A DNA stretch of 63,911 bases, filler included, from Octopus bimaculoides (lineage: Eukaryota), in NCBI RefSeq assembly GCF_001194135.2. It is 9 parts of 9 records of this genome, joined end to end, with 100 filler letters (N's around TTAATTAATTAA, not from the genome) between each part and the next. Parts side by side here need not be neighbours in the genome. Positions count along the whole stretch, not along the records: positions 49,184 to 54,516 come from NW_026331339.1; 8 more parts are not named here. One strand, given 5' to 3'. Positions 51,780 to 53,327 of the stretch are shown one piece after another. Position 1 is the stretch's first letter, and each line of letters starts with the position of its first letter. The translations under genes were made by a program, and so were the position numbers. Below the pieces are notes generated by a model that was given only the letters and a program-made list of their open reading frames with translations, was not told where the DNA came from and did no database searches.

Positions 51780-52153
51780 GTAGACACATGACTCAGTATA
51801 TGCTCTTGGCTACATTTTAGTTAAAGCTACAGCTTTAAGACTGTCCAGAGTTACGTCTCTTCGAGATATCCTACTGATAATGTCTAAAGAGCTAGAAACG
51901 CGTCTGAGAATCCGACAGGTTGCAGCGTCGGACAGATATGGTGTTTTTACACCTTTTAACCACACTATACTACGAAGTATATTAAACGTTGTCTAAGTGA
52001 ATACCGTGTACTACTGTGTTAGCAGTGCTCCTAAATCACGTGTTAAGGTCATCTCTTGTGGTCGCATAACGAAATACCATGTCCCTACAGGTCATTAATA
52101 TTTACGCACCAGCTCCCAGAAATGTGTTTAATATGTAAAATTCGTATATCCAT

Positions 52154-52271
52154 ATATACGGCCATATCACTTTGAAAACACCGGTTCTCGTCCGATCACC
52201 AAAGTTAAGCAAAGTCGATACTAGTTAGTACTTAGATGGGTGACCGCTTGGGAAACCTAGGTGCTGTAAAC
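52154..52271 (+). rRNA. 5S rRNA sequence, full length (probably a retroposed copy)
   Basis: TACGGCCATATCAC..TGAAAACACCGGTTCTCGTCCGATCACC.AAGTTAAGC...GTTAGTACTT.GATGGGTGACCGC.TGGGAA...GGTGCTGTA is collinear with animal 5S. It is followed by GATTTT. Confidence 0.92.
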
Positions 52272-52277
52272 GATTTT

Positions 52278-52661
52278 AGGCGCAGGGGTGGCTGTGTGGT
52301 AAGTAGCTTGCTTACCAGCCACATTGTTCTGGGTTTAGTCCCACTGCGTGGCATCTTGGGCAAGTGTCTTCTACTATAGCCTCGGGCCGACCAAAGCCTT
52401 GTGAGTGGATTTGGTAGACGGAAACTGAAAGAAGACCGTCGTATATATGTATATATATGTATGTGTGTCTGTATTTGTCCCCCCCCAACATCGCTTGACA
52501 ACCGATGCTGGTGTGTTTACGTCCCGGTAACTTAGCGGTTCGGCAAAATAGACCGATAGAATAAGTACTAGGCTTCCAAAGAATAAGTCCTGGGGTCGAT
52601 TTGCTCGACTAAAGGTGGTGCTCCAGCATGGCCAGTCAAAAAGACTGAAACAAGTAAAAGA
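52278..52661 (+). mobile_element. SINE family A, full length and little diverged
   Basis: Starts AGGCGCAGGGGTGGCTGTGTGG, contains TTGGGCAAGTG core and short (TA/TG) insert, and ends ACTGAAACAAGTAAAAGA. Confidence 0.95.
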
Positions 52662-53327
52662 GTAAAATTCGTATATCCAAGAACGTTACACCGCTCTATG
52701 CAGTGGCTATTTAAGCAATAAGTTCGAAGATGGTTAATGGGTTGGCTGGGTGTTGATGAAGGAACAAAAACTCCCGAAATATGGTTTATACGCCCATCAA
52801 CCATTTTTTTCACTGTTGTGTGAATTGATTGAAAACCCATTTCTGATGTATATTAACTTTTGAAGTTTCATTAGAGCCAGTGTATCTCTTTCACGTAGCC
52901 AGTTCACATCAGTGTCGTTGACAATCACACATACACTCTAACATACATTCTCACATACACTCACATACATATACTAAGACAGACACACAGACAAACATTC
53001 ACGTACACCTCAGGGTAAACAATATTCATTATATACTTGTCAGTCATCACATATGCATATGTATGAATGGATGTGTGTGTGGGCCGATTCTAGGCATTTG
53101 TGGGACGTCACTATCTCTCTCTCTCTCTCTCTCTCTGAACATCTAACACCCTAATTGTATCTCTCTGTATAACGGCCTATCTCTCTCCCTCAGTCTCTCT
53201 CTTTAGATGTGTGTGTGTGTGTGTATCAGTCGTAGCAAAAATGTATGTATACTCACACACACATATACCTTCACATACACTCACACGTATACTTGCCAGT
53301 TATCACATATGTATATGTATGTGTAGA

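What the first reader, a model, noticed from the sequence alone, without database searches (positions are those of the whole stretch)
52135..52679. Full-length 5S rRNA fused to a full-length tRNA-SINE and inserted as one unit (18-bp TSD)
Seen: a complete 5S sequence (52154-52271), a 6-nt GATTTT linker and a family A SINE starting at its normal 5' end, all between two identical GTAAAATTCGTATATCCA repeats. The TSD start (GTAAAA) also matches the SINE's GTAAAAGA-type tail, as expected for target-primed insertion. Established: 5S-headed SINEs (SINE3) exist, and mammals have U6/5S-retroposon chimeras whose U6 junction follows the Pol III U-tail. Inference: this is either a one-off chimera (template switch or RNA ligation) or a member of a 5S+tRNA double-promoter SINE family. 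I do not know of either being described in cephalopods.
Basis: partly seen in the sequence, partly recalled or inferred. Interest (0 to 1): 0.85.

Follow-up and report, generated by a model that had tools for sequence, protein, structure and literature searches.

The report
5S rRNA–SINE chimeric retro-insertion in octopus
A complete 5S ribosomal RNA copy, still carrying its U-tail, is joined head-to-tail to a complete octopus SINE and the pair was pasted into the genome in one step, which matches the proposed first step in the birth of 5S-headed SINEs but is a known kind of event.

Summary
Rfam finds a full-length 5S rRNA at 52154-52272 (94.6 bits). It is followed by ATTTT, the only run of four or more T in the insert. 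An about 385-nt tRNA-CORE SINE then starts at 52278, at the same AGGCGC as an independent full-length copy I fetched from Octopus vulgaris and O. sinensis. An exact 18-mer brackets the 5S-SINE pair and occurs nowhere else in the piece. The first 7 nt of that 18-mer equal the SINE's own 3' end, so the duplication is 11-18 bp with microhomology, as target-primed reverse transcription predicts.

Best reading: one insertion of a composite cDNA. A LINE reverse transcriptase most likely copied the SINE RNA to its 5' end and then jumped to the U-tailed 3' end of a 5S transcript.

I could not settle whether this jump happened at this locus or in a master copy. No tool gave genome-wide access to octopus DNA. 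The retained terminator and the two intact heads favour a dead-end chimera. Published automated annotations listing SINE/5S and SINE/5S-Core-RTE classes in octopus keep the family reading open.

It is a new member of a known kind and of moderate interest.

The parts
52135..52152 (+). Upstream copy of the target-site duplication, GTAAAATTCGTATATCCA
   Evidence: Exact 18/18 match to 52662-52679 (D11). There are only two matches in the window at up to 2 mismatches, against 0.01 expected by chance. Similarity to the downstream side stops immediately outside the 18-mer.
52153..52153 (+). A single T between the TSD and the 5S: either an extra nucleotide at the 5' junction or an altered first base of the 5S
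   Evidence: Read directly from the sequence. The Rfam alignment starts at 52154.
52154..52272 (+). 5S rRNA-derived module, full length, sense orientation
   Evidence: Rfam RF00001, 94.6 bits against a gathering score of 38, E 2.6e-20, model 1-120. 29 of 34 model base pairs are canonical. The broken pairs are 52154/52271, 52156/52269, 52182/52201, 52219/52262 and 52220/52261.
52273..52277 (+). ATTTT: the U-tail/terminator remnant of the 5S primary transcript.
   Evidence: It is the only run of four or more T in 52153-52661. It sits exactly between the end of the Rfam 5S match and the first SINE base.
52278..52661 (+). Complete octopus tRNA-CORE-type SINE. Sub-parts: tRNA-like head 52281-52352 (box A-like TGGCTGTGTGG 52289-52299, box B-like GGGTTTAGTCCCA 52331-52343); CORE-like CTTGGGCAAGT 52355-52365; internal (TA/TG)n plus C8 tract at about 52440-52487; 3' body; tail GTAAAAGA 52654-52661.
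   Evidence: Degenerate cloverleaf found by ARAGORN at 70% threshold only. Copies of 79-81% identity exist in O. vulgaris L001 and O. sinensis L003. It shares its 5' start AGGCGC with the independent full-length copy. It has about 15 private differences in 311 sites against a three-copy majority. There is no T4 run inside it.
52662..52679 (+). Downstream copy of the target-site duplication. Its first 7 nt (GTAAAAT, 52662-52668) coincide with the SINE's own 3' end.
   Evidence: Exact repeat. The other two SINE copies read ...AAGA(G/A)TAA(AA)T at this position. This is microhomology between the RNA 3' end and the nicked target.

Best explanation
One target-primed reverse-transcription event inserted a composite cDNA.

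A LINE endonuclease nicked the bottom strand opposite ...TAT|GTAAAAT.... The freed 3' end (...ATTTTAC) annealed to the GUAAAAU 3' end of a SINE transcript. The reverse transcriptase copied the whole SINE RNA to its normal 5' end. Instead of stopping, it jumped to the 3' end of a 5S transcript that still carried its Pol III U-tail (AUUUU), and copied that to its 5' end or within about 3 nt of it. Second-strand synthesis then produced the 11-18-bp duplication.

I take the jump to have happened in this very event, which would make the locus a dead-end chimera. Transcription from the 5S promoter would mostly stop at the retained TTTT. Transcription from the SINE's own box A/B would leave the 5S behind.

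Shown: the anatomy, the single pair of flanking repeats, the tail/target microhomology, the normal SINE 5' end, and the unique T4 at the joint.

Inferred: template switching as the way the two RNAs were joined, the LINE partner (probably RTE-type), and that the event was de novo at this locus.
For: - Full-length sense 5S directly followed by ATTTT, then the SINE.
- One exact 18-mer brackets both modules and nothing else does.
- The 7 nt at the start of the repeat equal the SINE 3' end seen in two other genomic copies.
- The SINE starts at the same AGGCGC as an independent full-length O. vulgaris/O. sinensis copy.
- The only T4 in the 509-nt insert is at the 5S 3' end.
- The SINE part is young, at most about 4.8% private divergence. 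The 5 broken pairs out of 34 in the 5S are more than the ~2 that much decay of a normal 5S predicts (Poisson P about 0.05), but are still compatible with it if one or two mismatches are native; an intact 36-nt TSD also fits that age.
- Precedent: L1 makes U6/L1 and Alu/L1 chimeras in which the small RNA is full length, in sense orientation and at the 5' side, and these do not propagate afterwards (PMC11838501).
- Precedent: template switching from a SINE to 5S rRNA is the published model for AmnSINE1-type heads and for HaSE3 (PMC4824008; PMC4758252; PMC3272025).
Against: - No genome-wide search was possible, so 'single copy' is not shown.
- Automated annotations list 4 '5S' SINE families covering 9.8 Mb in O. 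vulgaris, and SINE/5S plus SINE/5S-Core-RTE in O. bimaculoides. Multi-copy 5S-headed consensus sequences therefore exist in octopus, and this could be one of their copies.
- Five broken pairs in the 5S is somewhat more than the roughly 2 expected from 4-5% neutral decay. The source could already have been a diverged 5S-like master.
- How well TTTT terminates Pol III in molluscs is not known. In the context A-TTTT-A it may be leaky.
- The SINE's normal 5' end rests on only one independent full-length comparator.
Confidence: 0.5

Rival explanations
1. This is one copy of a propagating composite SINE family: 5S head, then a tRNA-CORE SINE, with two Pol III promoters. A master copy, itself born by template switching, is transcribed from 5S position +1. 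Pol III reads through the weak A-TTTT-A terminator, and the LINE machinery recognises the SINE tail. The locus would then be an ordinary family insertion.
For: - SINE class '5S' in O. vulgaris: 4 consensus families, 9,831,953 bp, and one family counted as recently active with 7 insertions (PMC13282606).
- 'SINE/5S-Core-RTE' at 0.021% and 'SINE/5S' at 0.030% of repeat copies in O. bimaculoides (PMC8967140, Table S2). That label fits 5S + CORE + RTE-type tail.
- About 24,000 5S-derived loci in the giant squid, 'likely SINEs'.
- The insert begins within 1-3 nt of 5S position +1, as a 5S-promoted transcript would.
- Five broken pairs in the 5S part hint at a source that had already diverged.
Against: - The T4 terminator is retained exactly between head and body. 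No comparable terminator remnant is mentioned in the descriptions I read of the known 5S-headed families, and HaSE3 has also lost the tRNA head; I did not see their consensus sequences.
- Consensus sequences built automatically can also arise from many independent chimeras, or from 5S arrays, and none of those sequences could be inspected.
- No second copy appears in the piece or in 72 kb of octopus DNA, although that sample is far too small to count for much.
Confidence: 0.33
2. The RNA was a read-through transcript from a source locus where a SINE had earlier inserted immediately behind a 5S gene or orphon. Pol III started at the 5S, ran through TTTT and the SINE, and this RNA was retrotransposed through the SINE tail.
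For: - The 12 nt in front of the SINE (GTAAACGATTTT) begin with the same GTAAA as the present target site and the SINE tail. That is what an earlier SINE insertion at that spot would leave behind.
- The G-A before the T-run could be genomic spacer.
Against: - It needs two retrotransposition events plus terminator read-through.
- GTA at that position is simply the normal 3' strand of 5S helix I, so the resemblance is weak.
- No source locus is available to inspect.
Confidence: 0.09
3. The two RNAs were ligated end to end before reverse transcription, as RtcB does for U6/L1, and the ligated RNA was then copied in one pass.
For: U6/L1 chimeric RNAs are made by RtcB ligation before retrotransposition (PMC6789731, listed). 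The joint here is clean apart from the U-tail.
Against: From established biochemistry, RtcB joins 2',3'-cyclic-phosphate or 3'-phosphate ends to 5'-OH ends. A primary 5S transcript ends in 3'-OH uridines, and a primary SINE transcript starts with a 5'-triphosphate. Neither end suits RtcB without prior processing. This was not tested here.
Confidence: 0.05
4. The arrangement is not a single event. Either two separate insertions lie next to each other with a chance repeat, or an assembly error joined a 5S to a SINE.
For: None positive. Read-level support could not be checked.
Against: - An exact 18-mer lies at precisely the outer edges of the pair, against 0.01 matches expected by chance.
- No repeat flanks the 5S alone or the SINE alone.
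- A misjoin would not create matching duplications at the outer boundaries.
Confidence: 0.03

Closest known systems
HaSE3 of Helicoverpa armigera (a 5S rRNA / tRNA-SINE chimera family)
   Same: A 5S-derived 5' part is joined to the body and tail of a tRNA-derived SINE that has an RTE-type tail. TSDs of 8 and 19 bp are reported. The authors propose template switching from the SINE RNA to 5S rRNA (PMC3272025; PMC5786205).
   Different: HaSE3 has lost the tRNA head and central domain of HaSE1, and it is a family found in several species. Here the whole tRNA-like head and the 5S U-tail/terminator are still present, and the copy number is unknown.
AmnSINE1 / SINE3-type DeuSINEs of vertebrates
   Same: A 5S sequence is fused to the 5' end of a tRNA-derived SINE head. 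[quoted passage not shown]
   Different: [quoted passage not shown] They carry a Deu domain rather than a CORE domain, and they are old, multi-copy and vertebrate. This locus looks like the unprocessed starting state.
Mammalian LINE-1 chimeric insertions (U6/L1, Alu/L1, 5S/L1)
   Same: A full-length small Pol III RNA lies at the 5' side in sense orientation, with one TSD pair around the whole insert. These are individual events that do not propagate (PMC11838501).
   Different: The 3' partner there is a 5'-truncated L1 with a poly(A) tail. Human 5S/L1 chimeras are mostly antisense and truncated at 5S positions 46 or 90. Here the 5S is sense and complete, the partner is a complete SINE with a non-poly(A) tail, and the enzyme is an octopus LINE.
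Automatically annotated 'SINE/5S' and 'SINE/5S-Core-RTE' repeat classes in octopus genomes
   Same: The class label (5S head, CORE domain, RTE-type tail) fits this element, and the host genus is the same (PMC8967140, Table S2; PMC13282606, Suppl. Table 1).
   Different: Only class names and abundances are published in the texts I could read.
Octopus tRNA-CORE SINEs (the OR-type SINEs of Ohshima and Okada 1994; the 'tRNA-Core' class)
   Same: The 3' module has a tRNA-like head, the CORE-like CTTGGGCAAGT motif, and copies in O. vulgaris and O. sinensis. tRNA-Core is the dominant octopus SINE class, at 27-31% of repeat copies.
   Different: Ordinary copies have no 5S in front.

Membership tests
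Chimeric retro-insertion made by LINE template switching (Buzdin-type / U6-L1-like) | Two modules derived from different RNAs are fused directly, in the same orientation | tested here: met
   5S (+) at 52154-52272, ATTTT, then the SINE (+) from 52278.
Chimeric retro-insertion made by LINE template switching (Buzdin-type / U6-L1-like) | One pair of target-site duplications encloses the whole chimera, with none around either module alone | tested here: met
   The exact 18-mer occurs only at the outer edges.
Chimeric retro-insertion made by LINE template switching (Buzdin-type / U6-L1-like) | The 5' module is a complete small Pol III RNA joined at its U-tail. The 3' module carries the tail used for priming. 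| tested here: met
   Rfam model positions 1-120 followed by ATTTT. The SINE tail GTAAAAGA(GTAAAAT) overlaps the start of the TSD.
Chimeric retro-insertion made by LINE template switching (Buzdin-type / U6-L1-like) | A unique event: a single locus, with an empty orthologous site in relatives | not testable with these tools
   Octopus assemblies cannot be searched by DNA. Pattern scans of the available collections do not even find the SINE itself.
5S-headed SINE family (SINE3 in the sense of SINEBase) | At least 60% identity to 5S rRNA over at least 60 nt, in a short interspersed element under 1 kb | tested here: met
   Definition from PMC3531059. Rfam 94.6 bits at full length. The unit is 509 nt.
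5S-headed SINE family (SINE3 in the sense of SINEBase) | [quoted passage not shown] | not testable with these tools
   There is no genome-wide access and no octopus 5S reference. The published class abundances suggest such families exist but do not show this sequence.
5S-headed SINE family (SINE3 in the sense of SINEBase) | The 5S head can drive Pol III through the whole element, with no terminator between head and tail | tested here: not met
   TTTT at 52274-52277 lies between the 5S and the SINE and is the only T4 in the insert. Whether it leaks in octopus is unknown.
Octopus tRNA-CORE SINE | A tRNA-like head with box A/B, a CORE-like motif, and multiple copies in octopus genomes | tested here: met
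   Cloverleaf only at the 70% ARAGORN threshold, with no hit at default settings or in Rfam. CTTGGGCAAGT at 52355-52365. Copies in L001 and L003 at E down to 1e-149.
Functional 5S rRNA gene | All helices intact and a genomic setting as a gene rather than a retro-copy | tested here: not met
   5 of 34 pairs are broken, including two in helix I. The copy is solitary and lies inside a TSD-flanked insert.

The most novel reading that the evidence does not exclude
The locus is a member, possibly a young and still active one, of an uncharacterised octopus SINE lineage. That lineage would carry two complete Pol III promoter modules, a full 5S and a full tRNA-like head. It would spread because the four-T terminator between them is leaky in cephalopods. 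If so, it would be the sequence behind the unexplained 'SINE/5S' and 'SINE/5S-Core-RTE' annotations. It would also be a living intermediate in the route by which 5S heads replace tRNA heads.
Probability: 0.3. Interest if true: 0.55.

Novelty: new member of a known kind. Interest (0 to 1): 0.4.

Why it matters
The accepted model for how 5S-headed SINEs arise (SINE3, AmnSINE1, HaSE3) is that a reverse transcriptase jumped from a tRNA-SINE RNA onto 5S rRNA. That model was inferred from old, already trimmed families.

This locus shows the proposed starting product with nothing yet lost. It has a whole 5S with its U-tail, a whole tRNA-like head, one duplication around both, and a young age.

It also indicates that the octopus LINE machinery, which built SINEs into more than 10% of the genome, makes chimeras of the U6/L1 type. 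That offers a concrete explanation for the 5S-type repeat classes and the thousands of 5S-like loci that cephalopod genome papers report without comment.

It is not a new principle.

Tried and rejected
1. Searching for other copies through proteins. The 89-aa antisense ORF across the joint found no candidate in the 5.8-billion-protein collection, so short ORFs from octopus non-coding DNA are not indexed there.

2. DNA pattern scans. A scan for the 5S-gap-SINE joint in metagenome contigs gave 0 hits. Scans for the SINE head alone in metagenome, prokaryote-genome and viral contigs also gave 0 hits. These collections therefore hold no copy of this SINE, and the negative joint result says nothing.

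3. The Tc1-like remnant in the piece as a handle on octopus contigs. It gave no hit.

4. Rhodopsin as a handle. This worked, but it yields only one orthologous 24-kb locus in each of three species. Those loci contain two SINE copies and no 5S.

5. Using O. bimaculoides as the empty site to define the ends of those two copies. This failed because the SINEs lie in a rearranged block of about 4 kb, and no TSDs could be found for them.

6. Getting a real cephalopod 5S sequence. Walker and Doolittle 1983 and Albertin 2015 are not held, and sequence-string searches of the paper library found nothing useful.

7. CpG decay as a clock. CpG observed/expected is about 0.9 across the piece, so it is uninformative.

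8. The idea that the upstream 18-mer is a second template jump onto a SINE tail rather than a TSD. I rejected it because other copies share only the first ~7 nt (possibly 11) with the 18-mer.

9. The mir-297, mir-466 and similar Rfam hits lie in TA/TG microsatellites, all far below gathering scores. They are artefacts.

Full report
**What is there**

In the piece 49184-54516, Rfam's 5S model matches 52154-52272 on the + strand over its whole length (model 1-120, 94.6 bits against a gathering score of 38, E 2.6e-20). Of its 34 model base pairs, 29 are canonical. The five broken pairs are two in helix I (52154/52271 A·C and 52156/52269 A·A), one in helix III (52182/52201 C·A), and two adjacent pairs at the base of helix IV/V. 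So this is a 5S copy that is complete and well preserved, but not a working gene.

Directly after it come A and TTTT (52273-52277). This is the only run of four or more T anywhere in the 509-nt insert.

A SINE runs from 52278. ARAGORN finds nothing at default settings, and Rfam finds no tRNA even when given only this stretch. At a 70% threshold ARAGORN draws a degenerate cloverleaf at 52281-52352. A box A-like TGGCTGTGTGG and a box B-like GGGTTTAGTCCCA are visible in the sequence. Downstream lie:
- a CORE-like CTTGGGCAAGT (52355-52365). The match to the MIR CORE is from memory, but the CCTTGGG motif is quoted in PMC5786205;
- an internal TA/TG microsatellite and a C8 tract;
- a 3' body ending in GTAAAAGA (52654-52661).

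The 18-mer GTAAAATTCGTATATCCA occurs exactly twice, at 52135-52152 and 52662-52679. No further match appears at up to two mismatches, against 0.01 expected by chance. It is the only 18-mer direct repeat within 1 kb outside a tandem array or simple-sequence tract.

**Bringing in real octopus DNA**

The DNA collections the tools can scan contain no copy of this SINE. A scan for the joint found nothing. Scans for the SINE head alone in metagenome, prokaryote-genome and viral contigs also found nothing, so the first negative is uninformative. ORFs across the joint are not in the protein collection either.

I therefore used rhodopsin as a handle and fetched the 24-kb rhodopsin locus from three assemblies:
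- O. vulgaris: L001, OX597836.1;
- O. bimaculoides: L002, CM046623.1;
- O. sinensis: L003, CM016881.1.

The window's SINE has two copies downstream of rhodopsin in O. vulgaris and O. sinensis, at 79-81% identity and nhmmer E down to 1e-149. O. bimaculoides has none there. This confirms that the 3' module is a genuine multi-copy octopus SINE.

The alignment (A1) shows three things:
1. The independent full-length copy begins with the same AGGCGC as window position 52278, preceded by unrelated sequence. The SINE in the window therefore starts at its normal 5' end. Only one independent comparator supports this.
2. Both other copies read ...AAGTA(A/G)AAGA(G/A)TAA(AA)T at their 3' ends. GTAAAAT, the first 7 nt of the '18-bp TSD', is therefore also the SINE's own end.
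3. The window copy carries about 15 private differences in 311 comparable sites against the three-copy majority. That is at most 4.8%, so it is a young insertion. An intact 36 nt of duplicated target fits that age.

No 5S was found in the 72 kb, either by BLAST or by Rfam at gathering threshold. That sample is too small to mean anything.

**How it most likely arose**

The pair lies between one set of duplications. Neither module has a repeat of its own. The start of the target repeat equals the 3' end of the SINE. This is the signature of target-primed reverse transcription of a single composite template:
- a nick opposite TAT|GTAAAAT;
- annealing of the SINE RNA tail to the freed 3' end;
- copying of the whole SINE, then of a whole 5S RNA that still had its U-tail.

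This is the architecture of L1-made U6/L1 and Alu/L1 chimeras, in which the small RNA is full length, in sense orientation and on the 5' side, and which do not propagate (PMC11838501). It is also the event postulated for the origin of 5S-headed SINEs. [quoted passage not shown] Ligation of the two RNAs before reverse transcription, as shown for U6/L1 (PMC6789731), is a less likely variant. From established biochemistry, RtcB needs a 3'-phosphate or cyclic-phosphate end and a 5'-OH end. Primary 5S and SINE transcripts do not offer these.

**One-off or family: unresolved**

For a de novo, dead-end chimera:
- The terminator remnant is still in place. It would stop most 5S-promoted transcripts before the SINE tail, while the SINE's own promoter would omit the 5S.
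- Both heads are complete, unlike any described 5S-headed family.
- The 5S decay (5 broken pairs) exceeds the ~2 expected from the age of the SINE part, though not decisively.

For a family:
- The curated O. vulgaris repeat annotation lists a SINE class '5S' with 4 consensus families and 9.83 Mb, one of them counted among recently active families (PMC13282606).
- An independent annotation lists SINE/5S in both octopuses and SINE/5S-Core-RTE in O. bimaculoides (PMC8967140, Table S2).
- The giant squid paper reports about 24,000 5S-derived loci.

These annotations show that multi-copy 5S-headed consensus sequences exist in cephalopods. A consensus of that kind could equally be assembled from many independent chimeras that share the same joint, and I could not see any of the sequences.

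I put a de novo chimera at about 0.5 and a propagating family at about 0.33. A third route is a read-through transcript from a 5S gene with a SINE inserted right behind it. It is hinted at by the GTAAA that precedes the T-run, but that is also just the normal 3' strand of helix I. I give it about 0.09. Two independent events or a misassembly are very unlikely given the repeat statistics.

**Comparison and novelty**

In mechanism and layout this is a chimeric retro-insertion of the known template-switch type. Its product has the layout of the presumed ancestor of SINE3/AmnSINE1/HaSE3-type elements.

It meets every testable criterion for a chimeric retro-insertion. For a 5S-headed SINE family it meets the 5S-similarity criterion of SINEBase (PMC3531059). 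It fails 'no terminator between head and body'. The copy-number criterion cannot be tested.

It needs the qualifier that automated annotations already carry matching class labels.

I rate it a new member of a known kind. It is interesting mainly as an unusually intact example and as a lead to what the cephalopod '5S SINE' annotations really are.

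Noticed in passing
window 50625-50990, minus strand: Remnant of a Tc1/mariner-like transposase N-terminus, with helix-turn-helix-like stretches (...GHSKKEAASRFGVDLKTVYNPMRLY... and ...VRKRVSRNPRWSMWQMGKSLDISQTTMRRVGHEDLN...) split by a frameshift. A protein search found no relative at E<=0.001.
   Followed up: partly
window 51658-51790: Tandem array of a 16-nt unit (GCACACATACATACRG), about 8 copies at 90-100% identity (family D3).
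   Followed up: no
window 49184-49445, 53203-53450, 54284-54424: Long TA/TG/CA microsatellite tracts. They produce dozens of Rfam 'mir-297/mir-466/mir-3149' matches, all far below gathering scores. These are false positives from simple sequence.
   Followed up: yes
window 52754-52809 and 53760-53815: Two direct copies of a 56-nt sequence, 79% identical and 1 kb apart. The first lies 75 nt downstream of the insertion. This is an unidentified short repeat, with no match in the 72 kb of octopus DNA fetched.
   Followed up: partly
L001 18771-22874 versus L002 18928-19202: Downstream of rhodopsin, O. vulgaris and O. sinensis carry about 4 kb that O. bimaculoides lacks at that position. The block includes both SINE copies and an inverted segment, so it is lineage-specific and rearranged. 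L002 also has several N-gaps.
   Followed up: partly
window 52440-52487; alignment A1 columns 211-310: The SINE carries an internal (TA)n(TG)n microsatellite followed by a C-run. Its length differs greatly between copies, and even between the orthologous O. vulgaris and O. sinensis copies.
   Followed up: no
window 52145-52161: The end of the upstream TSD and the start of the 5S form a near-palindrome (CGTATAT-CCAT-ATATACG). This may be chance, or it may relate to how the 5' junction was sealed. The first three 5S bases (ATA) are also the ones that fail to pair in helix I.
   Followed up: no
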